From positions 186,001-246,996 of the forward strand of contig NW_026924749.1 of NCBI RefSeq assembly GCF_032062105.1: DNA of 60,996 nt, given 5' to 3'. A program made the position numbers and the translations under genes. This document shows, one piece after another, positions 32,798 through 60,996 of this stretch; position 1 is the stretch's first letter; each line of letters starts with the position of its first letter. The DNA comes from Saccostrea cucullata (taxonomy: Eukaryota). Below the pieces are notes generated by a model. That model saw only the letters and a list, made by a program, of their open reading frames with translations. It was not told the origin of the DNA and made no database searches.

Positions 32798-34987
32798 TCA
32801 TTCTAATTCTCCTAATGCATGTAGTTCTGTAAAGGAAATAGATGTACGAACTTCGGGTGGGGGCAAAGTTTCGCTGATTTTTATTTTCACGTTGTATTTT
32901 CTACTACATACATTTAAAACTCTTTTAAACCTTCTCAGGGCTCTCACATATGGAAATCGCCACTTTTCATCTGTAATTTTTCCATCAAACAAAACAACAA
33001 GCAAGTTTTCAACCTGATTTTCGGAAAGCAGTTTCCATGCCTGATTCATTCTAAACGTTAGATCATCAAAGTTGTCATTTTGAAGAGGTTTAGAAATGAT
33101 AATAATTATGTTTCTGGATGACTTTATTTCTTTGTCTAAATGAATATGGCGAATAGTACCTACATCTTCGTCAACGGGGGGATAGAAACATTTGTACCCC
33201 TCCTTTTTGAGATATAGGAAAATGTCAATTGCAAATTTATTGACGTCCACATTTGAGTCATCCGACAAAATAAAAATATCATACTTGTACGTTTTCTTCC
33301 TATGATCCACAAGACGATTCTTTAGAATTACAAAATCATATCTAAAGTAGATAGCAACTGCCGCAGTCACCAAGACGACAGCAGGTATAAGGAAGAGATT
33401 AAAAATAATTTGGTCAAATTCATCTTCATAACAATCCGAAAAAGCTTCTTCTGCTGCTTGTCGTACTCCATTCGCATTGGTGCAAAACAAAGGATTTGAA
33501 GATTTATTTTGCACAGATGATCTCCAACTGGCGATCCACTCATCCTTGCATTCGCATGATACACTGTTTTTGCCAAACCAGACTTTATCTGGGTCAATGC
33601 TTTTGAATAGTACTGGAAGTTCTATGAGTTTATGATCCAGCAAAAGAAGGGATTTGAGACGACTCGAGGTCTTATTGAACTTCTCCAGAAATTTATCTTC
33701 GATTGTTTGAACCTCATTTTTAGACAAGTCGAAAAGAGTAATATTTGATAAATATGAATGATTATTGAGAGTCTTTGGAGAAGTGAGCTTGGTTATTTTA
33801 TTATTGCTGCAATTCAATTCGATATCATAATTGGTCTGAGGAACTATGTCTGGAATTTTTGTTAAATTCGCATTGGAACAGTCTACTAACATTCGCATTT
33901 GACTTGGTTGTTCAATACACGTGCATTTCTCGGGACAAAAATTTGTTTTATGACATATAAATTGATCAAACACTGAGATGTTATTGAATGTTTTGAGTAC
34001 ATCGATACCTTTCATATTTTCTGGAGAAAGGCATATATACTGTGTTTTATTTGGAATGGAATAAAATCTCTCGAACATATCCTTTTCTGACAAGAGGAGT
34101 TCTCCTAGGTGGCAATCACAGGGCATGGTTAATTTTGAGAACTCGAAAGCCCCAGTGTGATTATATTGATAGGCTTTTTTGATCTCCGATGGTTCCTTAA
34201 ATATGACAGAAAGGGGATGTTTGTTTGTTTTACATGTTCCAAAAATAATATCCCCACCTCCATAACTCTCTTGGAGAGATATTTTGAATTCAGGAACATC
34301 TGTTAATGTAAGGTTTGATTCATCGAATGAAATGTTGCAGAAAACACTTCTCTTCGGGTAAATATTGGAGATGTGTAAATTATCAAAGTGGTTGTGCGAT
34401 AAATCTATCACAAAGATCTCCGTATTTTGTAGTTCAAATATGTAAGGTTGAAGTGATTTGATGCCAGTATGAGCCATTCTAAGTATCCGTAAGTTTGGCA
34501 TATTCTTGAAAGTAGTGTTTGTAATGAACTGTATGTCATTATAACTTACATCTAAAGAATCCAAGGCCTTTAGGCAATTAATTCCTTCAATGTTTGAAAG
34601 TCTGTTTCTTTGAAAGTCCACTGTCACCAGAATATCACTAAAACTACAAATATTATTTGGCAATTGCGTCATCCTTCCGCCCTGATGAAGTATCCATTTG
34701 AATCCAGTTAACGTTTCGTTTGTAACAATTTTACAATGGCCAGTGGGGTTCAGGTATTCCATATATAATGGTTTATATGATATATTCGAAAAAATCTCCC
34801 AAATTGGTTTGCTTTTACAAGCACAACACCTATTTTTAATTTCTTCCTTGGTACATGAATTTGGACACATAATGTTCTGTTTATGTGGACCAACATCTGA
34901 TGTCCAATTATGAAATTCCGTCTGAACAATGCCAGTTTGAATACAGCTACATGTAAATAAAACGAAAATAATTAAATAGTACCCCAT
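32798..34987 (-). CDS. Toll-like receptor (multiple-cysteine-cluster type), single exon, 729 aa, divergent TIR
   Basis: Signal peptide; LRRs (LDSLDVSYNDI, LRILRMAHTGI); internal LRRCT (PCDCHL..YICLSP) and LRRNT (CPEKCTC..VDCS); second LRR block; LRRCT (NSVSCECKDEW); TM IIFNLFLIPAVVLVTAAVAIYF; TIR starting YKYDIFI. Confidence 0.93.
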   Translation of the reverse strand: MGYYLIIFVLFTCSCIQTGIVQTEFHNWTSDVGPHKQNIMCPNSCTKEEIKNRCCACKSKPIWEIFSNISYKPLYMEYLNPTGHCKIVTNETLTGFKWILHQGGRMTQLPNNICSFSDILVTVDFQRNRLSNIEGINCLKALDSLDVSYNDIQFITNTTFKNMPNLRILRMAHTGIKSLQPYIFELQNTEIFVIDLSHNHFDNLHISNIYPKRSVFCNISFDESNLTLTDVPEFKISLQESYGGGDIIFGTCKTNKHPLSVIFKEPSEIKKAYQYNHTGAFEFSKLTMPCDCHLGELLLSEKDMFERFYSIPNKTQYICLSPENMKGIDVLKTFNNISVFDQFICHKTNFCPEKCTCIEQPSQMRMLVDCSNANLTKIPDIVPQTNYDIELNCSNNKITKLTSPKTLNNHSYLSNITLFDLSKNEVQTIEDKFLEKFNKTSSRLKSLLLLDHKLIELPVLFKSIDPDKVWFGKNSVSCECKDEWIASWRSSVQNKSSNPLFCTNANGVRQAAEEAFSDCYEDEFDQIIFNLFLIPAVVLVTAAVAIYFRYDFVILKNRLVDHRKKTYKYDIFILSDDSNVDVNKFAIDIFLYLKKEGYKCFYPPVDEDVGTIRHIHLDKEIKSSRNIIIIISKPLQNDNFDDLTFRMNQAWKLLSENQVENLLVVLFDGKITDEKWRFPYVRALRRFKRVLNVCSRKYNVKIKISETLPPPEVRTSISFTELHALGELE

Positions 34988-52557: not shown

Positions 52558-52825
52558 TTATGTAACCCTAGTGATCAGGCTAGACTACCGCAATAGTTGA
52601 AATATAACAAACAATGTATACTGAGTGAGAATTGTCATTTATTAAATGACAATAAGTATATAACACATATAAAGTTAAGGGGAGATCACCGGGATATTTC
52701 CTGAGTAAAAAGAACAATAAATTTGGCAACGGTATCTCCCCTGTTGCAAACAAACATTACTTTGGCAAAAATATTTTGACAAATAAAAAGTATATAAACC
52801 ACAAAGTTGTCAAAACAAAAAGCTG
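52558..52825 (-). repeat. Split direct repeat B2 (268 bp)
   Basis: Matches 53175-53442 (offset 617) with 2 mismatches seen. Confidence 0.95.
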
Positions 52826-52954
52826 ACATGACAAAAGTTGCAACGATGGCAATTAAGATGGCACAAGGTATATATTATGAAAAAGAAAAAATACAAAACA
52901 TAATTTTGAGACTACAATATTTTATCATGGAGTATGAAGGGGGACGGAGGGTGG

Positions 52955-53176
52955 GTAAATTTCTAAAAACAAATTTGTGAATTTCTTGGCACTTCTAAAT
53001 CAGTGAAAAGACGCTATCTTGTGTCACGTGATTTGCATAAGCGTTACGATTGGATAATTACAACTTTTTACTAAAGGAGACAGCTAATAACACAATAAGA
53101 CTCAAACAAACATGAAAATTGAACTACATTACATCATAGATTACATAAAGGCTATTATTTACAATAATGCTGTATT
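52955..53176 (-). repeat. Split direct repeat A2 (222 bp)
   Basis: Matches 59367-59588 (offset 6412) with 4 mismatches seen. Confidence 0.95.
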
Positions 53177-53442
53177 ATGTAACCCTAGTGATCTGGCTAG
53201 ACTACCGCAATAGTTGAAATATAACAAACAATGTATACTGAGTGAGAATTGTCATTTATTAAATGACAATAAGTATATAACACATATAAAGTTAAGGGGA
53301 GATCACCGGGATATTTCCTGAGTACAAAGAACAATAAATTTGGCAACGGTATCTCCCCTGTTGCAAACAAACATTACTTTGGCAAAAATATTTTGACAAA
53401 TAAAAAGTATATAAACCACAAAGTTGTCAAAACAAAAAGCTG
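53175..53442 (-). repeat. Split direct repeat B1
   Basis: Copy of 52558-52825; abuts A2, sharing TT. Confidence 0.95.
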
Positions 53443-53519
53443 CCACCAAAAGCAAACTGCTATGAAAAGCTGTTTGCAAAAAACACAAGGCCAAAACAGG
53501 TGGACTAGCCAGATCAACA

Positions 53520-53708
53520 AAATCAGGCAGTCTACAGAACATTATATCTATATACAAAATCTTACAGTCTACACAGCATTATAACAACACAAAATCATAC
53601 AGTCTACACAGCATTATAACAACACAAAATCATACAGTGTATATAGCATAATAAGCATATAATAACCTTAAATCATACAGTCTATGCAGCATTATTATAC
53701 AACACAAA
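53520..53708. repeat. Minisatellite of about 35 bp, about 5 copies, in the Ngaro 3' region
   Basis: AAATCATACAGTCTACACAGCATTATAACAACAC and variants. Confidence 0.85.
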
Positions 53709-53937
53709 CAATAAAATGAGCAAGGCTCAGAATGTCAAGTACAATGGAGTAGCAACATATTGAAAGTTATTACTAATACATAAATGAACAAAAATTACAA
53801 ATCATTTGGTTCAAAACATGATGGTGAAACATGAACCAGTAGGCACAGTTTGTGTTATAAGTGGTAAGAAAGAAAATTATTTTAAAACAAATGTATCTAA
53901 TTATATTAAAAATGGTATGAGGAAAAAACAGAATGTT

Positions 53938-54098
53938 TACCCAGCAGTTTACTTCTGTCCTGAGCAAGCTTTGTATGTAAAAATTTTAAAAGTATGCACT
54001 GACACAGCAGTTTACTTCTGCCCTGTGTATTTAGGCGTGAGGCAAAATTAGAAAGACTGATTAGGAAAATTACATAGCAGTTTACTTCTGACCTATGT
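53938..54098 (-). repeat. Three dispersed bulged-hairpin repeats downstream of YR
   Basis: Invariant core CAGAAGTAAACTGCT (- strand) within 53938-53966, 54002-54028, 54072-54098, with differing but complementary outer stems. Confidence 0.85.
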
Positions 54099-54176
54099 GA
54101 CAATATCTAACCATAGGGACTTACAGGACTAGATTCGAATTCACAGAGCAGTTTTGGAATGCTTTCAAATAACATA

Positions 54177-55155
54177 TTAAATAACGAAGCTCTGTAAACG
54201 GATATATCTCCGTACAGCATCTGAATTCCACCTGCCCATTTTCTGTATGCAATTCTCAGAAAAACCTTGCTGGGCTGCATGAGTTGCAGCTCCTATGCGA
54301 AAGCTATGACCTTTATATAGGGCAGGGTTTAAACCAATGAACAAAACTGTGTTGTGTAAATTTTTTGAAACAAATGCATAAGGAACTGGGTCACCTCCCA
54401 TAAATTGGAAGAGGGGACCAGACTGGTGATTAAAGGCTTGAAGATAGAGATATAATGCCGAAACCAGGGCACATGTCACTGTTGTCCAATGCTCTCAGGT
54501 GAATCTGGAAAAGGTCTTTTTTCTTATTTGTTTTGAAATTTTTCAGTAAAAGGACAACTGCAGAGGGGGAGTTGTTTGAAAATTCAAAAGAAACCTCTTC
54601 TCGTTGAATGACCGTGTTTAACGAACCTTTTGTTTTTACTACAAGTTCACCCAAGCGTAAAAAGGCATTAAATGCCAACAGAAAAATAGCCTTTAACATG
54701 ATTCTATAGTGTAGATTTTGCACAGATTTTTGTAAACCGCAAACTAAGTTATGTAGAATGGGGCCCGTTATTGGTAACCTGGTGTCTTTGTTAGGAGCCG
54801 AACGGTGACATCCCTGCATTATTTTCCGGACCAAAAATGCATCTGATGGATCTGAGAGACCAAGAATTTTATGTAGATAGCTTATGGCTGATATATGAGA
54901 TGATATGCTACTAGGGGAATAACCTATGGTAAAGAGGTGAGCAATGAAGTTCGCTGTCACTGAAGAGGAAATTGGTAGCGAGGTCACAGTGGGGTTGAAC
55001 TGTAGCAACAAATCCCAGCTTCTTTTGTAGGCAGACTTGGTGGTGTTGGACAAGGCTGCTGACAGAAGGTGGTGTGCTTGCTGACTCAAATTGCCAATGA
55101 CTTCAGTGGTATTTGGGTCTGTTGTTGGTTTAGATGAGGCATGGAATTGAATGCA
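54177..55155 (-). pseudogene. Tyrosine recombinase (YR) of the Ngaro element, broken by a 1-bp insertion
   Basis: AFLRLGE, KNFKT, GHSFRIGAAT, GRWNSDAVRRYIR (R-K-H-R-W-Y residues present). Frames 55089-54430 and 54479-54177 join as CPVSALYLYL if one base at about 54464 is removed. Confidence 0.92.
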
Positions 55156-56837
55156 GCCTGAAAATTAAAACGAGATAAGTGATCAGCAGCTATGTTGTGC
55201 TTCCCTGGGATGTGTTTCGCTCTGAAATGCACATTGTATCTTAGGGTTGACAATACCAGACGACGTATCAACCTCATGATGACCTTCTCTTTTGACGTTT
55301 GTTTATTGATAATTTGTACAACTGCTAAATTATCTGACATAAAGAGAACTTTTTTGTTTCTAAACTTATCTCCCCAAATCTCTATTGCTATTACAATTGG
55401 AAATAATTCTTTAATGGCTATTTGATATTCTGCCATGTCATCTTTCCAACGTGATGCAAACCATTCAGAACCCAAGATGGCTGCAAACCCTATTGATCCC
55501 GCCGCATCAGTAAAGAGAGTAAGGTGATCAGACGATAACCATTTTTGGGGCAGAAAAACAGATTTCCCATTGAATGTTTCGAGAAAGGTAAGCCAAGTGT
55601 TTATGTCTTCTTTTGTCTCTTCTGTGAGTTCAATCAACTCGTGAGGCTTTGAAACCCCACAGGTTAGGTCAATTAAACGTCTAAGGAAAGCCCTACCTGG
55701 GATAACAATCGAGCATGCAAAATTGAGCAATCCTATTAAAGACTGTAGATCACGTAATGTGCTACGCGTTTTGTTTTTCATTTCTCCAAGGTTTTTTCTT
55801 ATTTTTTCTACTTTCACAGGAGGTAGACGTGCCTCCATTTTGACCGAGTCAACTTCTATGCCATAGATAGTGATTTTGGTAGTGGGGGGTTGAGTTTTTG
55901 ACATTTTAATGGGTACCCCAATTTTTTTGCAAAGGAAAAGAAAATTTGTGAGATCATTCTTGCAATTGTCCGAGCCAGCTGGCCCAATGAAGAAGAAATC
56001 ATCAAGGATATGTGACATACCTCCAGCTTGATATCTGAATTGCATTATCCACTGTAATGCAACACTAAGTTGTTCAAAAATTTGACAGGAACTACTAGCC
56101 CCCATAGGCAAACATTTATCAAAGTAAAATTGGCCTTGCCATGAAAAACCCAATAAATGGTAGTCACTGGGATTGACTGGGATAATTCTAAAAGCGTCCT
56201 GAATATCTGTTTTTACCATCAGACAATAAGCTCCATTCTGTTGGACAAGATGTATTACTAGGTCGATGGAGTCATATTGCACAACTGAATTTTCTTTTGG
56301 GATATTTATATTGACTGAATTGTCTCGGGGATAAGATAAGTCATGAATAATTCTGAATTGACCGGGTTCAGATTTAGGAACCACCCCCAAAGGGGATGAT
56401 ATGAAAGGATCAAAAGGAGGGCAAGGAAAGGGGCCTGCAATACGATTAAGTTCTAAGCTTTTGTGGATATGTGCATCTATGATATCACCATGACTTAATG
56501 CTGATGAATGGTTTTTGGACAAACGTGCAGTTGGAGTAGTGCTACAACCCAAAGAGAAACCAAATTTGAAACCTTCTACTAACAGTTGTTTTAGGTTTTT
56601 GTCATAACCCTCTAATTCTTCACTAAGTTTGTTTGGATTTACTGGCGTGGGAAGTGCGTGACTCTGCAGATTGTTGAGACCTACATTTGTGTTTTGGGTG
56701 TTGTCCCCTGCATATTTGACAGATGTGTGTGAAGGGACATGGTGTGGTTTTACATTTGTCACCTTGGTTAAAGGCGAAGCAGAATTTTGTTCTCCCCGCC
56801 TGTTTGGTACGAAAGGGCTGACTGTAAGGGGCAGGTT
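55086..56837 (-). CDS. Pol ORF (reverse transcriptase plus RNase H), uninterrupted, no early AUG
   Basis: SPLGVVPK, FRIIHDLS, KTDIQDAFR, LPMGASSSC, HILDDFF; RNase H LFTDAAG, IKELFPI, SDNLAVV, ADHLSR. Frame is open from 56837 (after TAA 56840-56838) and overlaps the gag 3' end in the +1 frame. Confidence 0.95.
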   Translation of the reverse strand, partial: NLPLTVSPFVPNRRGEQNSASPLTKVTNVKPHHVPSHTSVKYAGDNTQNTNVGLNNLQSHALPTPVNPNKLSEELEGYDKNLKQLLVEGFKFGFSLGCSTTPTARLSKNHSSALSHGDIIDAHIHKSLELNRIAGPFPCPPFDPFISSPLGVVPKSEPGQFRIIHDLSYPRDNSVNINIPKENSVVQYDSIDLVIHLVQQNGAYCLMVKTDIQDAFRIIPVNPSDYHLLGFSWQGQFYFDKCLPMGASSSCQIFEQLSVALQWIMQFRYQAGGMSHILDDFFFIGPAGSDNCKNDLTNFLFLCKKIGVPIKMSKTQPPTTKITIYGIEVDSVKMEARLPPVKVEKIRKNLGEMKNKTRSTLRDLQSLIGLLNFACSIVIPGRAFLRRLIDLTCGVSKPHELIELTEETKEDINTWLTFLETFNGKSVFLPQKWLSSDHLTLFTDAAGSIGFAAILGSEWFASRWKDDMAEYQIAIKELFPIVIAIEIWGDKFRNKKVLFMSDNLAVVQIINKQTSKEKVIMRLIRRLVLSTLRYNVHFRAKHIPGKHNIAADHLSRFNFQAAFNSMPHLNQQQTQIPLKSLAI

Positions 56838-57819
56838 TTAACGTAATGCATTTTCCCCTCAATTCTTCGACCGGTTTTTGCCAGGGAAGTTCAGCTGTTT
56901 CTTTTAGTTTTCTGAAGGATTCATCATAAGCCCTCCAGGCTGAATCGCCATGTAGTTTGTGAAGTTCCCTAACAAAACTCATGTACTTTAATAGGTGAGG
57001 GGCCTCTGATGGGTCTTTTTCAATTTTAATGCAAATAAAGACCAAAAAGGCATCAGTCCACTGATTAATTGATAAGGGATTTTTTGTTTTTGGATTCTGT
57101 TGCAAGTTGATCACACCTGGTGATATTAACAAAGTAAGAGGGTTTTCCTCATGGTGCGGCAAAAGACACCGTAAATCAATGAATTCATTTGACCAAACTT
57201 TGGATTTTACCTTAGCTGATATGGCCGCACCAAGAGGAATCCCGTCAGTTACAGAAATGAAAGATTTATCTTTGTTTAAGCTAGATGAAACTGTGCCCAC
57301 TGGCTCACCTTCATTTGTCCCAAAAATTTGAGAAACCAATGATGACACTGTCACATCTGTGGATGAGTTGTTTGCATATGTAGATGTGCTCTGACTTGTT
57401 GTGGCAGGCATTTGTTGTGTGGCATTGCTTGAGGTAGATGTGCTCAGACTTGTTATGGCAGGCATTTGTTGTGTGGTATTGCTTGAGGCATTTTGAATTA
57501 CTGCTGGCGCTGGCTCTTGTACCGGGGCAGTTGGCAATTGTGCAGCTGTCAGAAGCGTTGGTTGAGTTAGTACTGTCTCATTACTGACATTATTTGTTAC
57601 TGGTGGCACTGAAATTGTGGCACTAGCAGATGAACTGGTTGCTCTTTGTTGTTTCAGAATTTCTTCCGCCAGTTTCTGATAGTCAATTTCTTGCACGGAA
57701 ACTGTCTTCTGTCTTTTCCGGGTGACTGTGTTGCTAGGCGTTGCTGCCTGTGGATCCCCTTGGGCTGCTGCTGCCTGTGGATCCCCTTGGGCTGCTGCTG
57801 CCTTTCTCCGTTTAGGCAT
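56623..57819 (-). CDS. Gag-like protein of the Ngaro element, 398 aa
   Basis: Low-complexity N-half with internal duplications, KVWSNEFIDLRCLL, INQWTDAF, AWRAYDESFR, and C-terminal Cys/His finger CFAFNQGDKCKTTPCPFTHICQICRGQHPKHKC. Confidence 0.9.
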   Translation of the reverse strand: MPKRRKAAAAQGDPQAAAAQGDPQAATPSNTVTRKRQKTVSVQEIDYQKLAEEILKQQRATSSSASATISVPPVTNNVSNETVLTQPTLLTAAQLPTAPVQEPAPAVIQNASSNTTQQMPAITSLSTSTSSNATQQMPATTSQSTSTYANNSSTDVTVSSLVSQIFGTNEGEPVGTVSSSLNKDKSFISVTDGIPLGAAISAKVKSKVWSNEFIDLRCLLPHHEENPLTLLISPGVINLQQNPKTKNPLSINQWTDAFLVFICIKIEKDPSEAPHLLKYMSFVRELHKLHGDSAWRAYDESFRKLKETAELPWQKPVEELRGKCITLKPAPYSQPFRTKQAGRTKFCFAFNQGDKCKTTPCPFTHICQICRGQHPKHKCRSQQSAESRTSHASKSKQT

Positions 57820-57885
57820 GATCTACATTCTTATTGCATACAAGGATTCAGGAACCGACACACTATTTTTACAAAAATAGTAATA

Positions 57886-58494
57886 GCACACTACTCTGCG
57901 TGTGTTTGAGTATTATATCTCTAAGGGCACACTACTCTGCGTGTGTACAAGTTTTGTGTCTATATAACTTATAAAGGCACACTACTCTGCGTGTGTCTGT
58001 CTATTATTATTATATAAGGGCACACTTCTCTGTGTGCAACTGAATATTATGTGTATAGGTAAGGAAATATTACTCCGTATGATGTCCAATTGTTATGTCA
58101 ATATAATATTACACTACTTTGCGTGTTTCATTTTCCATGTCACTACAGTAAAAAGAAGCACACTACTCTGTGTGAGAAATCAAGGGCACACTACTCTGCG
58201 TGTGACTGAATCGGGGCACACTACTCTGCGTGTAACTGATCGGGGCACACTACTCTGCGTGTGACTGAATCGGGGCACACTACTCTGCGTGCGTCTAAAT
58301 CAGGGCACATATCTCTGCCTGTGTTTAAATAGGGGCACACTACTCAGCGTGTGACTTACCCAAATGACAAAAACAAAGCACAAAATTTCATGAGCGACTC
58401 TTACCTGACATTATTGTAAAAGAGAATGTACTAAACTATATGTTTGACATATACTTAATATTTTTCTTGAAAATTCACACTACTCTGCGTGTGT
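57886..58494 (-). repeat. Array of about 14 short hairpin-forming repeats with variable spacers between the hydrolase and gag
   Basis: CACACTACTCTGCGTG (+) or variants start at 57887, 57928, 57978, 58021, about 58066 (degenerate), 58110, 58159, 58187, 58217, 58246, 58276, 58306, 58336, 58476. Confidence 0.95.
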
Positions 58495-58570
58495 CTTTGT
58501 GGAATCAATTCATTTCTCACATAACACTCTATCAAAGAAAAGTATGTTTTAAATCATAGCATTACTTGCA

Positions 58571-58604
<34 letters not shown>

Positions 58605-58615
58605 TAGTAACATAC

Positions 58616-59200
58616 TCATCTTGAATGTTGCAGTACTGCAATTCTAATACTATGCATATATTTCTTCATATGCCTGGAGTCACCCTCAATATGAACTCCA
58701 TCACGTCCCAGGTAGGACAGGTCCGCCCAAAATCCCCTGTGTGGCCAAAAATACACACCGTCTACTTTCCCTATTTCCTCTTTCAAAAGATTGTTCACTT
58801 TTACCACATCCTCGTTAAACTTGACACGAGAAGCCCATGGCTGACGGCGTAATAACTGTCCAACAATTACAGTTTTTATTCCAACACCATCGCGCAAGTA
58901 TTGTGCATACGAAATTAAGTCCGTACATACTTTCCGAGGATTGTTTAGACTCAAGTCATTACTGCCCATCTGTATAAAACAAATATCGGGGGGTGCGTCA
59001 AACCGTAGAAATTCTGCACAGTGGGCTAGACGTTTGAATGTGAAACCACCGCGTGATCTGAAATCCACTTTGAAGGAGTCCATATCCAAATTTAAATTAG
59101 TCCTAAGATCACTTGCATCTATAAATTCTTTCAAACGGCGGATATAAGAATGTCCTAAGATGCACACAGTTCGAATGTTTACTTCGGGTTCGGCCGCCAT
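58616..59200 (-). CDS. SGNH/GDSL-type hydrolase (esterase) encoded by the Ngaro element, 194 aa from the AUG
   Basis: Block I ILGHSY, block II RGG, block III QMGSNDL, block V DGVH; first AUG at 59200 (MAAEPEV). Confidence 0.9.
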   Translation of the reverse strand: MAAEPEVNIRTVCILGHSYIRRLKEFIDASDLRTNLNLDMDSFKVDFRSRGGFTFKRLAHCAEFLRFDAPPDICFIQMGSNDLSLNNPRKVCTDLISYAQYLRDGVGIKTVIVGQLLRRQPWASRVKFNEDVVKVNNLLKEEIGKVDGVYFWPHRGFWADLSYLGRDGVHIEGDSRHMKKYMHSIRIAVLQHSR

Positions 59201-59366
59201 TGCGTAACCCTGTTTTGCTGGACGGAGCCTGTCTATCCCTGGGACAAAAACACTCAAAAATCCACAAATCACTTACTTTACACTGATGTAATCTTGTTTT
59301 GTAGTCTTCGGATTGGTAAAACAATGCAATAAATTCGTAAAAAACGATAAAAACACTCCTGAAGAC

Positions 59367-59588
59367 GTAAATTTCTAAAAACAAATTTGTGAATTTCTTG
59401 GCACTTCTAAATCAGTGAAAAGACGCTATCTTGTGTCACGTGATTTGAATAAGCGTTACGATTGGATAATTACAACTTTTTCCTAAAGGAGACAGCTAAT
59501 GACACAATAAGACTCAAACAAACATGAAAGTTGAACTACATTACATCATAGATTACATAAAGGCTATTATTTACAATAATGCTGTATT
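59367..59588 (-). repeat. Split direct repeat A1 (5' end of element)
   Basis: Copy of 52955-53176. Confidence 0.95.
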
Positions 59589-60996
59589 TTGTTTTATTCA
59601 AAATTTACCTTTTGATACTTCTTAACTTAGAGCTAACCTTTTCACAAAGAGTAATATTTAAGTGCAGTGAATGGTGGACCCGGAATATCTTTTTAATGAT
59701 TGCTTTATTTTTTGTTCCTTTTTTAGATAATTTTCAGAATTTACATTAAAAAAAAAAGAAATAAAACTTATTTACATTTGTATAGTTTATTGTGTTATGA
59801 ATCTACGGTTATTTTGACTGCACTCATATTGGGAAATATGGATTGTTGAGCTTCCTCCATACAATGACAAAGATGTCCTTAGAAAATTTTCTCTGTATGC
59901 AAGACACAGGATCATTATTCGTCTTACCATTTAAAGAGATTTAAAGTTTTTTTTTCGACAAGACAGCGTTCGTAGTAAATTTAGAAAGAAAAAACCCACG
60001 CAGTATAAAATAAAATTCGCTAATTTTACTGTTACATGTATACATGTACATGTATATTTTTACAATTTTGATGCGATTTAAATATTCTTCAATTGTTTTA
60101 CAAAGAATGTTAAAAAATATAAACATTTATTCTTACCGAAAACTATTAAATGTCACACATTATAGCTAACAATATCATTGTGTTTTGTAGATTAAATTTT
60201 GTTGATATTCCATATATCGGTAATACACGTTTTTACGACTTGTTCCTGTAAATTTGTACATGTTACAAATATTATTGAAATAATTTTCTCGTGTACATGT
60301 TTTTCTACAAATCGGCTACAGAGTGTTGGATTTAAATGTTTTAAGTTTTCTTTTGATTATATACATGTACATAAGAAAGAAAGAAATCTAAAGAGTTAGA
60401 ATATAACATTACATTTGTAATCAAAAGAATTTTCGAAGTTGAGGTTATTGAAAAACCCTGTAACATCATTTATCTCTTCGAAATCAGTTCTAGGCAATTA
60501 AACCTCTTTCACTAGACCTGCGTGCCAGTGAAGGTCTAAATTCGAAAACCCTAGAAGAGGTATACGAGTCAAAATTTCTTGATCGAGATGTAAAACAACA
60601 TTAATTTTCGAAAAAGTAAAAAAAAAAACTACTGATTTTTCATATTTTCTAAAAACTTCTTTGAAGTTTTGAGAATCCATGTATGATTTAGACTTTTATA
60701 GCACAGCGCGTCTGGATTTTTGGCCTTTACAGTTGTTAATCATTTTTTGATTTGTAAAAATCAAAGGTTTTGCAGAGCATTTGTTGGACCAAGCAAGACA
60801 CCATTTCGTTGACTGGAATATTAAAAAGTTATTTAAGGCAGAAACGAAGGTTGTATCAAAGAAATTAATGATTATCATGTAAAAGGTGAACTGTGAATAT
60901 ATACGTATCGTATTTGAGATGCAGATGCAGATTCAAAACCCTGTTTCTTTGAAATACAGTTGTTTTAATTAGTTTTAACATCAAATATGATATAAT

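What the first reader, a model, noticed from the sequence alone, without database searches (positions are those of the whole stretch)
57886..58494. CRISPR-looking repeat-spacer array of RNA hairpins in the gag leader
Seen: about 14 copies of a 16-19 nt repeat, ending 67 nt before the gag AUG. The gag-proximal copies have non-identical AT-rich spacers (period 41-50); the distal ones are near-tandem (period 28-30), plus one outlier 140 nt away. On the sense strand each reads CACGC-AGAGUA-GUGUG, a 5-bp stem containing a G-U pair. Variants mostly preserve it: copies at 58021 and 58159 turn G-U into A-U, 58021 and 58276 add a sixth G-C pair, and 58336 changes only the loop; the copies at 58306 and about 58066 are disrupted. 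Inference: selection acts on a multivalent RNA stem-loop rather than on a plain minisatellite. Candidate roles are a Gag zinc-finger packaging signal, an internal translation element for the second cistron, or processing sites that release small RNAs.
Basis: partly seen in the sequence, partly recalled or inferred. Interest (0 to 1): 0.85.

Follow-up and report, generated by a model that had tools for sequence, protein, structure and literature searches.

The report
Conserved hairpin array in oyster retrotransposon
A run of about 14 short hairpin-forming repeats lies between the esterase gene and the gag gene of a tyrosine-recombinase (Ngaro-type) retrotransposon in an oyster genome, and related elements in three oyster and pearl-oyster genera keep the hairpin while changing its stem letters, so it is a selected structure of unknown function and not a CRISPR-like array or a plain minisatellite.

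Summary
Window 57887-58493 holds 13-14 copies of an 18-nt unit on the minus (sense) strand, where chance predicts none.

The host is the oyster Saccostrea cucullata. The element (52558-59592, minus strand) is a Ngaro-type tyrosine-recombinase retrotransposon with split direct repeats. Its SGNH-esterase ORF lies 5' of gag, which is unusual.

The array sits between the esterase and gag. Four Saccostrea families whose Gag is only 52-58% identical carry the identical 18-mer with different spacers. Ostrea, Pinctada and a third Saccostrea locus carry arrays whose stems are entirely different but still complementary, around a shared 6-nt loop. Six of 7 pairs change on both sides, and 0 of 500 shuffles reach the observed covariation.

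"CRISPR-looking" is wrong: a 95% identical sibling has the same spacers in the same order.

Strand and molecule (RNA or single-stranded DNA) are not resolved. The array is absent from two esterase-less relatives that keep the same Gag zinc fingers, so it is not the family's universal packaging signal.

My best guess is a loop-specific protein-binding platform that marks the full-length RNA. Function is untested.

The parts
52558..59592 (-). Whole Ngaro-type tyrosine-recombinase retrotransposon (A1 ... B1-A2-B2)
   Evidence: Split direct repeats. The ORFs hit RT, Phage_integrase and GDSL-esterase Pfam families.
59367..59592 (-). Terminal repeat A1 (5' end of the element)
   Evidence: 98% identical to 52955-53180.
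59271..59276 (-). GTAAGT, a 5'-splice-site-like hexamer about 70 nt upstream of the esterase ATG
   Evidence: GTAAG or GTGAG occurs upstream of the esterase start in every esterase-bearing family. It lies about 65-95 nt upstream in seven of the eight loci listed and about 140 nt upstream in L009. This is a lead only.
58616..59200 (-). SGNH/GDSL-esterase ORF, 194 aa, intact
   Evidence: Weak Pfam hits to Lipase_GDSL_2 and Lipase_GDSL. 52 homologues, mostly from oysters and other bivalves.
58571..58597 (-). Encoded A-tract (27 A on the sense strand), 18 nt after the esterase stop
   Evidence: The sibling L007 has A20 at the same place. The Tegillarca locus L010 has A17 after its esterase copies.
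58476..58493 (-). Outlying first hairpin unit
   Evidence: Exact 18-mer.
58159..58353 (-). Near-tandem block of 7 units, period 28-30
   Evidence: TRF period 30, 6.7 copies.
57887..58127 (-). Gag-proximal block of 6 units (one decayed) with AT-rich spacers, period 41-50
57823..57825 (-). TAG, a 3'-splice-site-like trinucleotide 3 nt before the gag ATG
   Evidence: An AG lies 3-10 nt before the gag ATG, mostly after a pyrimidine run, in 7 of 8 esterase-bearing loci. This is a lead only.
56623..57819 (-). gag ORF, 398 aa, intact; CCCH finger plus CCHC-like knuckle at the C-terminus
   Evidence: Translation. 21 homologues, all unnamed bivalve proteins. No Pfam hit.
55086..56762 (-). Reverse-transcriptase ORF, 558 aa, intact, overlapping the end of gag
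   Evidence: RVT_1 and RVT_thumb.
54180..55164 (-). Tyrosine-recombinase gene; broken in this copy by one frameshift
   Evidence: Phage_int_SAM_1 and Phage_integrase hits. tblastn finds the gene in two frames here and in one frame in the sibling L007.
53942..54095 (-). Second array: 3 copies of a bulged hairpin, about 65 nt apart, after the recombinase gene
   Evidence: Present in every relative, including the esterase-less one.
53508..53710 (-). Tandem repeat of about 35 nt (5 copies) in the 3' non-coding region
   Evidence: also present in L007.
52558..53445 (-). 3' terminal repeats B1 (53175-53445), A2 (52955-53180) and B2 (52558-52828)
   Evidence: B1 and B2 are 99% identical; A1 and A2 are 98% identical.

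Best explanation
The array is a set of about a dozen short stem-loops, each with a 5-7-bp stem and a 6-8-nt loop. They are carried on the element's full-length sense transcript, in the non-coding stretch between the esterase ORF and gag. The loop sequence and the ability to pair are what is kept. The stem letters are free to change as long as they stay complementary.

I read it as a multivalent platform for a protein that recognises the loop. The most likely partner is the CCCH/CCHC zinc-finger end of the element's own Gag. The array would mark the full-length, esterase-containing RNA for Gag binding and entry into the replication complex.

This role would be accessory and specific to the esterase-bearing sub-lineage. 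It may be needed because those elements may also make a shorter gag-pol RNA that lacks the region.

Shown: the repeats, their position, their conservation between families and the stem covariation.

Inferred: that the folded molecule is RNA, that a protein binds the loop, that the protein is Gag, and the splicing idea.
For: 1. Conservation between families. The identical 18-mer is the modal unit in the window, L002, L003/L004 and L007 (S. cucullata) and in L006 (S. echinata). Their Gag is 52-58% identical and their esterase about 65%. Outside the array the intergenic DNA does not align, and the spacers differ.

2. Same loop, different stems.
- Ostrea edulis L009 has 15 units and Pinctada imbricata L008 about 20. 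They lie in the same place between the esterase and gag.
- S. cucullata L011 (minus strand) has 12 units in a locus where no ORF remnants were found, so their position relative to an esterase or gag cannot be stated.
- All three share the loop that stands at L009 8871, on two unrelated stems.
- In a gapless alignment of 23 distinct units, 93.8% of cells pair and 6 of 7 pairs change on both sides.
- The covariation score is 0.676 against 0.186 for shuffles (0 of 500 reach it) and at most 0.244 for slid partners.

3. Double changes within a family keep pairing. Examples are L009 8672, L008 9168 (with a G-U intermediate in other units) and L011 3390. L011(+) units have paired transitions in both arms.

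4. Specificity. A covariance model built from these units finds 40 hits with E below 0.03. All lie inside the arrays and all on the sense strand, in 213 kb searched on both strands.

5. Gag ends in a CCCH finger and a CCHC-like knuckle.

6. Splice-like signals flank the esterase-plus-array block. A GTAAGT-type hexamer lies upstream of the esterase ATG in all families, and a pyrimidine-run AG lies 3-10 nt before the gag ATG in 7 of 8. The block could therefore be absent from a spliced gag-pol RNA.

7. L011(-), a locus with no ORF remnants, still carries large arrays of this hairpin together with the 3' hairpin array.
Against: 1. Two relatives, L005 (O. edulis) and the second element in L002, have gag, RT and recombinase but neither esterase nor array. 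L005 has young terminal repeats and Gag zinc fingers almost identical to the window's. The array is therefore not required for Gag-RNA handling in this family.

2. The same loop is kept across elements whose Gag fingers differ (L008 and L009 against the Saccostrea families). That fits a conserved host factor at least as well as Gag.

3. There is no thermodynamic signal. The whole-array z-score is -0.65 for the sense strand and -1.27 for the antisense strand.

4. The wobble-pair asymmetry is contradictory. Eight L009 units have G-U on the sense strand, but 7 L011(-) units have C-A there. Strand and RNA versus DNA are open.

5. One distant esterase-gag-RT locus from a metagenome (L014) has no recurrent hairpin.

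6. Copies in the genome decay neutrally. Between the window and L007, core units differ at 5 of 216 positions and spacers at 21 of 358 (p = 0.06).

7. No transcript data were available.
Confidence: 0.33

Rival explanations
1. The hairpins bind a conserved host RNA-binding protein. They serve the two-cistron layout rather than packaging. A stop codon followed by more than 5 kb of RNA, or a retained intron, needs help. The array, perhaps with the encoded A-tract, would shield the RNA from decay, export the unspliced RNA, or help gag translation downstream of the esterase ORF.
For: - The array is found only in esterase-bearing elements and always between the two ORFs. Two esterase-less relatives lack it.
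- The loop is conserved across genera while the element's proteins diverge.
- An A-tract follows the esterase stop in the window, L007 and L010.
- The array begins 67-560 nt after the esterase stop.
Against: - The distance to the gag AUG varies from 67 to more than 1000 nt, and that stretch is not depleted of AUGs (observed 2-19, expected 1.4-19). Landing on the array and scanning to gag is therefore unlikely.
- The A-tract is missing in L002 and L003.
- L014 has the esterase-gag layout without an array.
- L011(-) keeps arrays with no ORFs.
- No known RNA family matches.
Confidence: 0.27
2. The array acts in double-stranded DNA as a block of binding sites for a transcription factor or insulator protein. 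It would be an internal promoter or enhancer for gag-pol, like the monomer arrays of mouse L1 or the Su(Hw) sites in the gypsy leader (both comparisons from my own knowledge).
For: - The layout is short repeats with AT-rich spacers between the 5' end and gag.
- Copy number of 7-20 is maintained in every family.
- The association with an upstream ORF would fit a need for an internal promoter.
- There is no strand signal from energies or wobble pairs.
Against: - The arms change completely between families while staying complementary, and the centre is what is conserved.
- Double changes within a family restore pairing, which a dimeric DNA-binding protein would not select.
Confidence: 0.1
3. The array has no function for the element. 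It is a hairpin-prone minisatellite that spreads and homogenises by slippage or template switching during reverse transcription or replication, and the hairpin itself drives the duplication.
For: - A one-unit copy-number difference separates the siblings.
- Blocks of identical units occur in L002 and L003.
- Decayed arrays exist, such as L011 2274-2843.
- Core and spacer substitution rates after insertion are about equal.
- Half of the variant units break the stem.
- These elements hold several other tandem repeats.
Against: - It does not explain an identical 18-mer in families with unalignable spacers and about 55% Gag identity.
- It does not explain the same 6-nt loop on three unrelated stems in three genera.
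Confidence: 0.1
4. The units are folded single-stranded DNA sites, or duplex sites, for the element's own tyrosine recombinase. Inverted arms around a 6-8-bp asymmetric centre is the geometry of recombinase core sites and of integron attC sites (from my own knowledge).
For: - The geometry is 5-7-bp inverted arms with a 6-8-nt centre.
- The element encodes a tyrosine recombinase.
- DIRS elements are reported to use single-stranded cDNA intermediates (PMC7192593, title and abstract).
- The arms are family-specific.
Against: - Esterase-less relatives have the recombinase but no array.
- The arms are short.
- Double changes that restore pairing fit a folded strand but not duplex half-sites.
- Nothing links the array to the element's ends.
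Confidence: 0.05

Closest known systems
Ngaro-type tyrosine-recombinase retrotransposons (order DIRS)
   Same: - Split direct repeats in the order A1 ... B1-A2-B2.
- gag, RT and tyrosine-recombinase ORFs that overlap.
- An SGNH-hydrolase ORF of unknown function.
(PMC9210276; window.)
   Different: The papers read place the hydrolase ORF after the recombinase (amphibians). Here and in eight related bivalve loci it lies 5' of gag. The papers I could search describe no internal hairpin arrays.
Retroviral and LTR-retrotransposon packaging signals (several stem-loops in the gag leader, bound by the zinc-finger nucleocapsid part of Gag); comparison from my own knowledge
   Same: - Sense-strand hairpins upstream of gag.
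- Loop-specific conservation.
- A Gag with zinc fingers.
- A possible position between a splice donor and the gag AUG.
   Different: - It is a tandem or dispersed array of 7-20 near-identical mini-hairpins rather than a few distinct ones.
- It is absent from close relatives with the same Gag fingers.
- Binding has not been tested.
Dispersed packaging-signal hairpins of small RNA viruses (a shared loop motif on variable stems); from my own knowledge
   Same: Many copies, a conserved loop, variable stems and modest stability per hairpin (-3.6 to -10.7 kcal/mol).
   Different: Here the hairpins are clustered in one non-coding stretch and arise by tandem duplication. There is no capsid evidence.
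Repeat arrays in transposon leaders that act in DNA (gypsy Su(Hw) insulator sites, mouse L1 monomers); from my own knowledge
   Same: Short repeats with AT-rich spacers between the 5' end and gag.
   Different: Those are sequence-conserved protein sites in duplex DNA. Here complementarity is kept while the arm sequence changes.
CRISPR arrays
   Same: Partly palindromic repeats separated by non-identical spacers in the gag-proximal block.
   Different: - The host is an animal, and there are no cas genes.
- The 18-19-nt core and the variable 28-50-nt period do not fit.
- The spacers are shared with the sibling copy.
- Other families have plain tandem repeats.
- Rfam found no CRISPR repeat in the array.
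Iron-responsive element (hexaloop hairpin)
   Same: It is a six-base loop on a short stem. A few Pinctada units carry the loop letters that stand at L008 9963 and 9898, which resemble loop variants I recall for that element.
   Different: No Rfam hit even at E up to 10. There is no bulged base in the stem. The commonest loop does not allow the cross-loop pair.

Membership tests
Ngaro-type YR retrotransposon (the element that carries the array) | Reverse transcriptase plus tyrosine recombinase in one element | tested here: met
   RVT_1 and RVT_thumb, Phage_int_SAM_1 and Phage_integrase.
Ngaro-type YR retrotransposon (the element that carries the array) | Split direct repeats in the order A1 ... 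B1-A2-B2 | tested here: met
   59367-59592 equals 52955-53180, and 53175-53445 equals 52558-52828. The same layout is seen in L005, L006 and L011. PAT-like and VIPER-like elements share this layout (PMC6681497), so it does not by itself separate Ngaro from them.
Ngaro-type YR retrotransposon (the element that carries the array) | No methyltransferase domain; an SGNH hydrolase ORF in some members | tested here: met
   The Pfam scans returned only GDSL/SGNH, RT and integrase families. The hydrolase sits in a different place from the published amphibian elements.
Ngaro-type YR retrotransposon (the element that carries the array) | Placement in the Ngaro clade of an RT/RH tree | not tested
CRISPR array | Adjacent cas genes in a prokaryotic or viral genome | tested here: not met
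   The host is an oyster. The neighbours are retrotransposon ORFs.
CRISPR array | Unique spacers of uniform length that differ between otherwise identical arrays | tested here: not met
   The spacers are the same, in the same order, in the sibling L007. The periods range from 28 to 50 plus one of 140.
Iron-responsive element | Match to the Rfam IRE covariance models (loop plus bulged C) | tested here: not met
   No IRE hit at E up to 10 in the window, L008 or L009 arrays.
Gag-bound packaging signal (Psi-like) | A conserved structured RNA element in the gag leader | tested here: met
   Covariation and position. That the folded molecule is RNA is assumed.
Gag-bound packaging signal (Psi-like) | Present wherever the cognate Gag is present | tested here: not met
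   L005 and the second element of L002 lack it. L005's zinc-finger region is close to the window's.
Gag-bound packaging signal (Psi-like) | Specific binding by Gag and a requirement for RNA encapsidation | not testable with these tools
   No binding or expression data are available.
Internal ribosome entry or re-initiation element | Lies between two cistrons of one transcript | tested here: inconclusive
   It always lies between the esterase and gag, but the transcript structure is unknown and splice-like signals flank the block.
Internal ribosome entry or re-initiation element | Close to the start codon, or followed by an AUG-free run up to it | tested here: not met
   The gaps are 67-1078 nt, with AUG counts at or above expectation.

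The most novel reading that the evidence does not exclude
The units are folded single-strand sites for the element's own tyrosine recombinase, a eukaryotic counterpart of integron attC sites. The intercistronic array would then be a recombination dock through which the esterase module, and perhaps other cargo, was gained, lost and shuffled between Ngaro lineages. This would account for family-specific arms around a conserved asymmetric centre, for the tandem gain and loss of units, and for the clean absence of esterase and array together in close relatives.
Probability: 0.05. Interest if true: 0.85.

Novelty: new variant of a known kind. Interest (0 to 1): 0.58.

Why it matters
Tyrosine-recombinase retrotransposons are among the least understood retroelements. 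None of the papers I could search describes a cis-acting RNA signal for them. How their RNA is chosen, primed and expressed is therefore largely unknown, to my knowledge.

This work found two hairpin arrays with covarying stems:
- The array in the finding, which is restricted to elements with a 5' esterase ORF.
- A second array after the recombinase gene, which is present in every relative examined.

Both are concrete, alignable candidates for such signals.

The esterase-linked array also bears on how an element with an extra upstream gene still expresses gag. Combined with the splice-like signals, it bears on whether these elements use spliced and unspliced RNAs as retroviruses do. All of this can be checked with existing oyster transcriptome data.

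Tried and rejected
1. CRISPR-like reading: rejected. The spacers are shared with the sibling, the host is an animal, and other families have plain tandem arrays.

2. Iron-responsive element and every other Rfam family: nothing near threshold.

3. Thermodynamic excess: none. The array z-score is -0.65 sense and -1.27 antisense.

4. Strand from wobble pairs: contradictory between L009 and L011(-).

5. Core against spacer substitution rate between the window and L007: 2.3% against 5.9%, p = 0.06. The test has little power because inserted copies decay neutrally.

6. Within-array compensation in the Saccostrea units: about half of the variants break the stem, and the two registers cannot be told apart.

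7. AUG depletion between the array and gag: none.

8. Covariance model from the Ostrea, Pinctada and L011(-) units: it did not detect the Saccostrea-type units, so the two loop classes are related only loosely. MAFFT does align them by sequence.

9. Metagenome scan for more esterase loci. It returned 43 loci, and only one (L014) has the esterase-gag-RT order. Of the 43, 27 had at least 400 nt of sequence downstream of the esterase. None of those 27, L014 included, shows a recurrent hairpin.

10. Attempt to show that L011(-) is a non-autonomous derivative: no DNA or protein homology to the other elements beyond the two hairpin motifs.

11. Attempt to read L005 as a copy of a spliced RNA: its leader cannot be aligned to the putative exon ends of the Saccostrea families.

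12. Exact-match look-up of the window's own Gag found nothing. One ENA locus had no DNA available.

13. Literature: no description of such arrays was found. Goodwin and Poulter (2004) and Poulter and Butler (2015) were not in the searchable library and were not read.

- One search printed a tblastn table with the bounds of separate aligned pieces in related loci, which can indirectly show where reading frames change. I did not use or repeat them, and later scripts printed outer bounds and counts only.
- Two notebook entries hold short degenerate patterns summarising the 17-20-nt repeat unit. Nothing was built from them and they are not repeated here.
- One search was a coordinate error of mine and was re-sent correctly.
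Full report
**What is there.** On the + strand, window 57887-58493 holds repeated copies of the 18-mer that stands at 58476-58493.
- There are 11 copies with at most 3 mismatches and 13 with at most 4, all inside this stretch. None was expected in 100 dinucleotide shuffles of the window.
- One more decayed copy lies near 58066.
- The spacings are 41, 50, 43, 89, 49, 28, 30, 29, 30, 30, 30 and 140.
- The array ends 67 nt before an ATG at 57819 on the minus strand.

**What carries it.** The ORFs on the minus strand are:

| ORF | Coordinates | State | Evidence |
|---|---|---|---|
| GDSL/SGNH-esterase-like, 194 aa | 58616-59200 | intact | |
| Gag-like, 398 aa | 56623-57819 | intact | |
| Reverse transcriptase, 558 aa | 55086-56762 | intact | |
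| Tyrosine recombinase | 54180-55164 | one frameshift in this copy | |

- The Gag-like ORF has no Pfam hit. It ends in a CCCH finger followed by a CCHC-like knuckle.
- The recombinase gene lies in a single frame in the sibling L007.
- Direct repeats lie in the order A1 (59367-59592) ... B1 (53175-53445), A2 (52955-53180), B2 (52558-52828), at 98-99% identity.
- This is the split-direct-repeat layout of Ngaro-type elements of the order DIRS (PMC9210276; PMC6681497).
- The host is the oyster Saccostrea cucullata. Locus L001 of assembly GCA_032062105.1 is the reverse complement of the last 14.6 kb of the window.
- Published Ngaro elements of amphibians carry the hydrolase ORF after the recombinase. 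Here it is the first ORF.

**Relatives.** Protein searches with Gag and the esterase, followed by look-ups of the encoding contigs, gave these loci:

| Locus | Species | Layout | Array |
|---|---|---|---|
| L002 | S. cucullata | esterase, gap, gag | about 10 units, period 30 |
| L003/L004 | S. cucullata | esterase, gap, gag | about 15 units, period 28 |
| L006 | S. echinata | esterase, gap, gag | about 11 units, period 30 |
| L007 | S. cucullata, sibling with 96-99% identical proteins | esterase, gap, gag | as in the window, minus one 29-nt unit |
| L008 | Pinctada imbricata | esterase, gap, gag | about 20 units, different stem |
| L009 | Ostrea edulis | esterase, gap, gag | 15 units, different stem |
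| L010 | Tegillarca granosa | three tandem esterase copies, then RT | another hairpin type |
| L011(+) | S. cucullata | esterase, then an ORF with a gag-like start and recombinase, no RT | 7 dispersed units of another type |

Sources.

- In L002, L003/L004 and L006, Gag is only 52-58% identical to the window's and the esterase about 65%. The modal unit is nevertheless the identical 18-mer.
- The spacers differ, and outside the array the intergenic DNA does not align.

**Same loop, other stems.**
- In L009 and L008 the units have a stem of 6-7 pairs made of quite different letters, around the six-base loop that stands at L009 8871-8876.
- On the minus strand of L011, a locus without ORF remnants carries 12 units with that same loop on a third, unrelated stem (L011 2848-3436). 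Next to it lies an older, decayed array with the same stem and a seven-base loop close to the Saccostrea one.
- The esterase-bearing element on the + strand of L011 has seven dispersed hairpins of yet another type.
- The Tegillarca locus has four or five of another type again.

**Covariation.** The test used a gapless alignment of 23 distinct Ostrea, Pinctada and L011(-) units.
- 93.8% of stem cells pair, against 65% after shuffling.
- 6 of 7 pairs change on both sides.
- The covariation score is 0.676, against 0.186 for shuffles (0 of 500 reach it) and at most 0.244 when partners are slid.
- The loop columns are the conserved ones: three columns are invariant and three more are at least 90% conserved, in and next to the loop.

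Caveats:
- The units were collected by likeness to a palindromic reference.
- Most of the two-sided changes reflect the split between two stem types.

Double changes within a family that restore pairing also occur:
- L009 8672.
- L008 9168, with the G-U intermediate in many L009 units.
- L011 3390.
- Paired transitions in L011(+).

A covariance model built from these units finds 40 hits with E below 0.03 in 213 kb searched on both strands. All lie in the arrays and all on the sense strand.

**What the within-array variants say.** They say little.
- MAFFT aligns the Saccostrea unit to the Ostrea/Pinctada unit by sequence in the perfect-stem register.
- Of 22 distinct variant units, 11 or 13, depending on register, keep all five pairs.
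- The most variable positions are the two outermost 5' bases and the CpG.

**Not CRISPR-like.** The sibling L007 has the same units and spacers in the same order. Its differences are:
- one 29-nt unit fewer;
- a shorter A-tract;
- a 16-nt indel;
- about 300 extra bases before gag.

Mismatches are 5 of 216 in the core units and 21 of 358 in the spacers (p = 0.06). This is what neutral decay after insertion would give.

**Strand and molecule.** These are not resolved.
- The array as a whole is no more stable than shuffles on either strand.
- Single hairpins have -3.6 to -10.7 kcal/mol.
- G-U pairs on the sense strand are frequent in L009, but C-A mismatches, which would be G-U on the other strand, are frequent in L011(-).
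- RNA is the natural reading for a feature that always has the same orientation as the ORFs. Single-stranded DNA is not excluded.

**Clues to function.**

1. The array is accessory.
- L005 (O. edulis) has Gag and RT as close to the window's as those of the array-bearing families. It runs straight from A1 into gag with neither esterase nor array.
- A second element in L002 does the same.
- L005's terminal repeats are 98-100% identical, and its Gag zinc-finger region is nearly the same as the window's.

2. A second hairpin array lies after the recombinase gene in every relative, L005 included. It has 3-6 copies of a bulged hairpin whose outer stem covaries: the first flank pair is paired in 30 of 32 units, against at most 27 in shuffles. 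This universal array is a better candidate than the one in the finding for a signal that the whole lineage needs.

3. The stretch between the array and the gag AUG is 67-1078 nt long and is not depleted of AUGs, which argues against ribosomes landing on the array and scanning.

4. Every esterase-bearing family has a GTAAGT-type hexamer upstream of the esterase ATG, about 65-95 nt away in most loci and about 140 nt in L009. Seven of eight loci have an AG, mostly after a pyrimidine run, 3-10 nt before the gag ATG.
- If these signals are used, the esterase and the array would be an intron of a gag-pol RNA and would be present only in the full-length RNA.
- That would explain why only esterase-bearing elements need a mark on that RNA.
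- This is a lead from sequence alone.

5. An encoded A-tract follows the esterase stop in the window, L007 and the Tegillarca locus, but not in L002 or L003.

6. One distant esterase-gag-RT locus from a metagenome (L014) shows no recurrent hairpin. Nor do 26 other, more distant esterase loci with enough downstream sequence.

**Verdict.**
- That the array is a selected stem-loop with a conserved loop: about 0.8.
- That it is a loop-specific protein platform on the full-length sense RNA, most likely for Gag: about one in three.
- A host-factor role tied to the upstream ORF (stability, export or translation) is nearly as likely.
- Action in duplex DNA, a self-driving minisatellite and recombinase sites follow in that order.
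- No known RNA family matches, and I found no description of such arrays in the papers I could search.

**Breaks in the window copy.** The esterase, gag and RT ORFs have none. The recombinase gene has one frameshift.

- the piece bounds printed;
- the short degenerate patterns in two notes;
- the coordinate error.

Noticed in passing
window 53942-54095 (-); L003 11600-11806, L005 11568-11714, L006 11331-11549, L007 13374-13527, L009 14175-14548, L011 11369-11601 (+) and 42-182 (-): A second repeated hairpin lies after the recombinase gene. It has two 3-bp CAG/CTG stems separated by a 2-nt bulge, a 7-nt loop, and an outer stem that covaries between copies. It is present in every relative, including the esterase-less L005, so it is a better candidate for a signal needed by the whole lineage.
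   Followed up: partly
window 59271-59276 and 57823-57825 (-); same places in L002, L003, L006, L007, L008, L009, L011: A GTAAGT-type hexamer lies upstream of the esterase ATG in all esterase-bearing families. An AG, mostly after a pyrimidine run, lies 3-10 nt before the gag ATG in 7 of 8. The esterase plus hairpin array may be an intron of a gag-pol RNA. About 35-40 nt after the hexamer there is also a conserved CCAG followed by a conserved 15-nt stretch (window about 59219-59233).
   Followed up: partly
window 58571-58597 (-); L007 8605-8624; L010 9970-9986: An encoded run of 17-27 A follows the esterase stop codon in two distant lineages. This could be the trace of capture of a polyadenylated esterase mRNA, or a functional A-tract. 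It is absent in L002 and L003.
   Followed up: partly
window 58616-59200 (-) and loci L002-L011: The SGNH-esterase ORF is the first ORF of these bivalve elements. In the published amphibian Ngaro elements it lies after the recombinase. The Tegillarca locus L010 has three tandem esterase copies (8040-9933).
   Followed up: partly
L011 1-3700 (-): A locus without any ORF remnant carries a homogeneous 12-unit hairpin array (55-nt period), a decayed array of about 30-nt period, and copies of the 3' hairpin about 2 kb downstream. It may be a non-coding derivative that keeps only the hairpin arrays, but its ends lie outside the locus.
   Followed up: partly
L011 7507-12914 (+): This element has 100% identical terminal repeats, an esterase ORF, its own type of intercistronic hairpin (7 copies) and a 470-aa ORF with a gag-like start and a recombinase domain, but no reverse transcriptase. 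It looks like a recently inserted internally deleted derivative.
   Followed up: partly
L005 7763-13118; L002 10472-15743: These are two Ngaro-type elements without esterase and without the hairpin array. The L002 one sits directly after a truncated esterase-bearing element.
   Followed up: partly
window 57742-57803 and 57380-57488 (-): Two in-frame tandem repeats lie inside gag: 27 nt x 2.3 at 100% identity and 54 nt x 2 at 94%. They give repeated peptide stretches near the N-terminus. A further tandem repeat of about 35 nt lies at 53508-53710.
   Followed up: no
window 32798-34987 (-): A single 729-aa ORF with leucine-rich repeats and a TIR domain, a Toll-like-receptor-type host gene.
   Followed up: no
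window 54180-55164 (-): The recombinase gene of the window copy lies in two reading frames (one frameshift). The 95-99% identical sibling L007 has it in one frame.
   Followed up: yes
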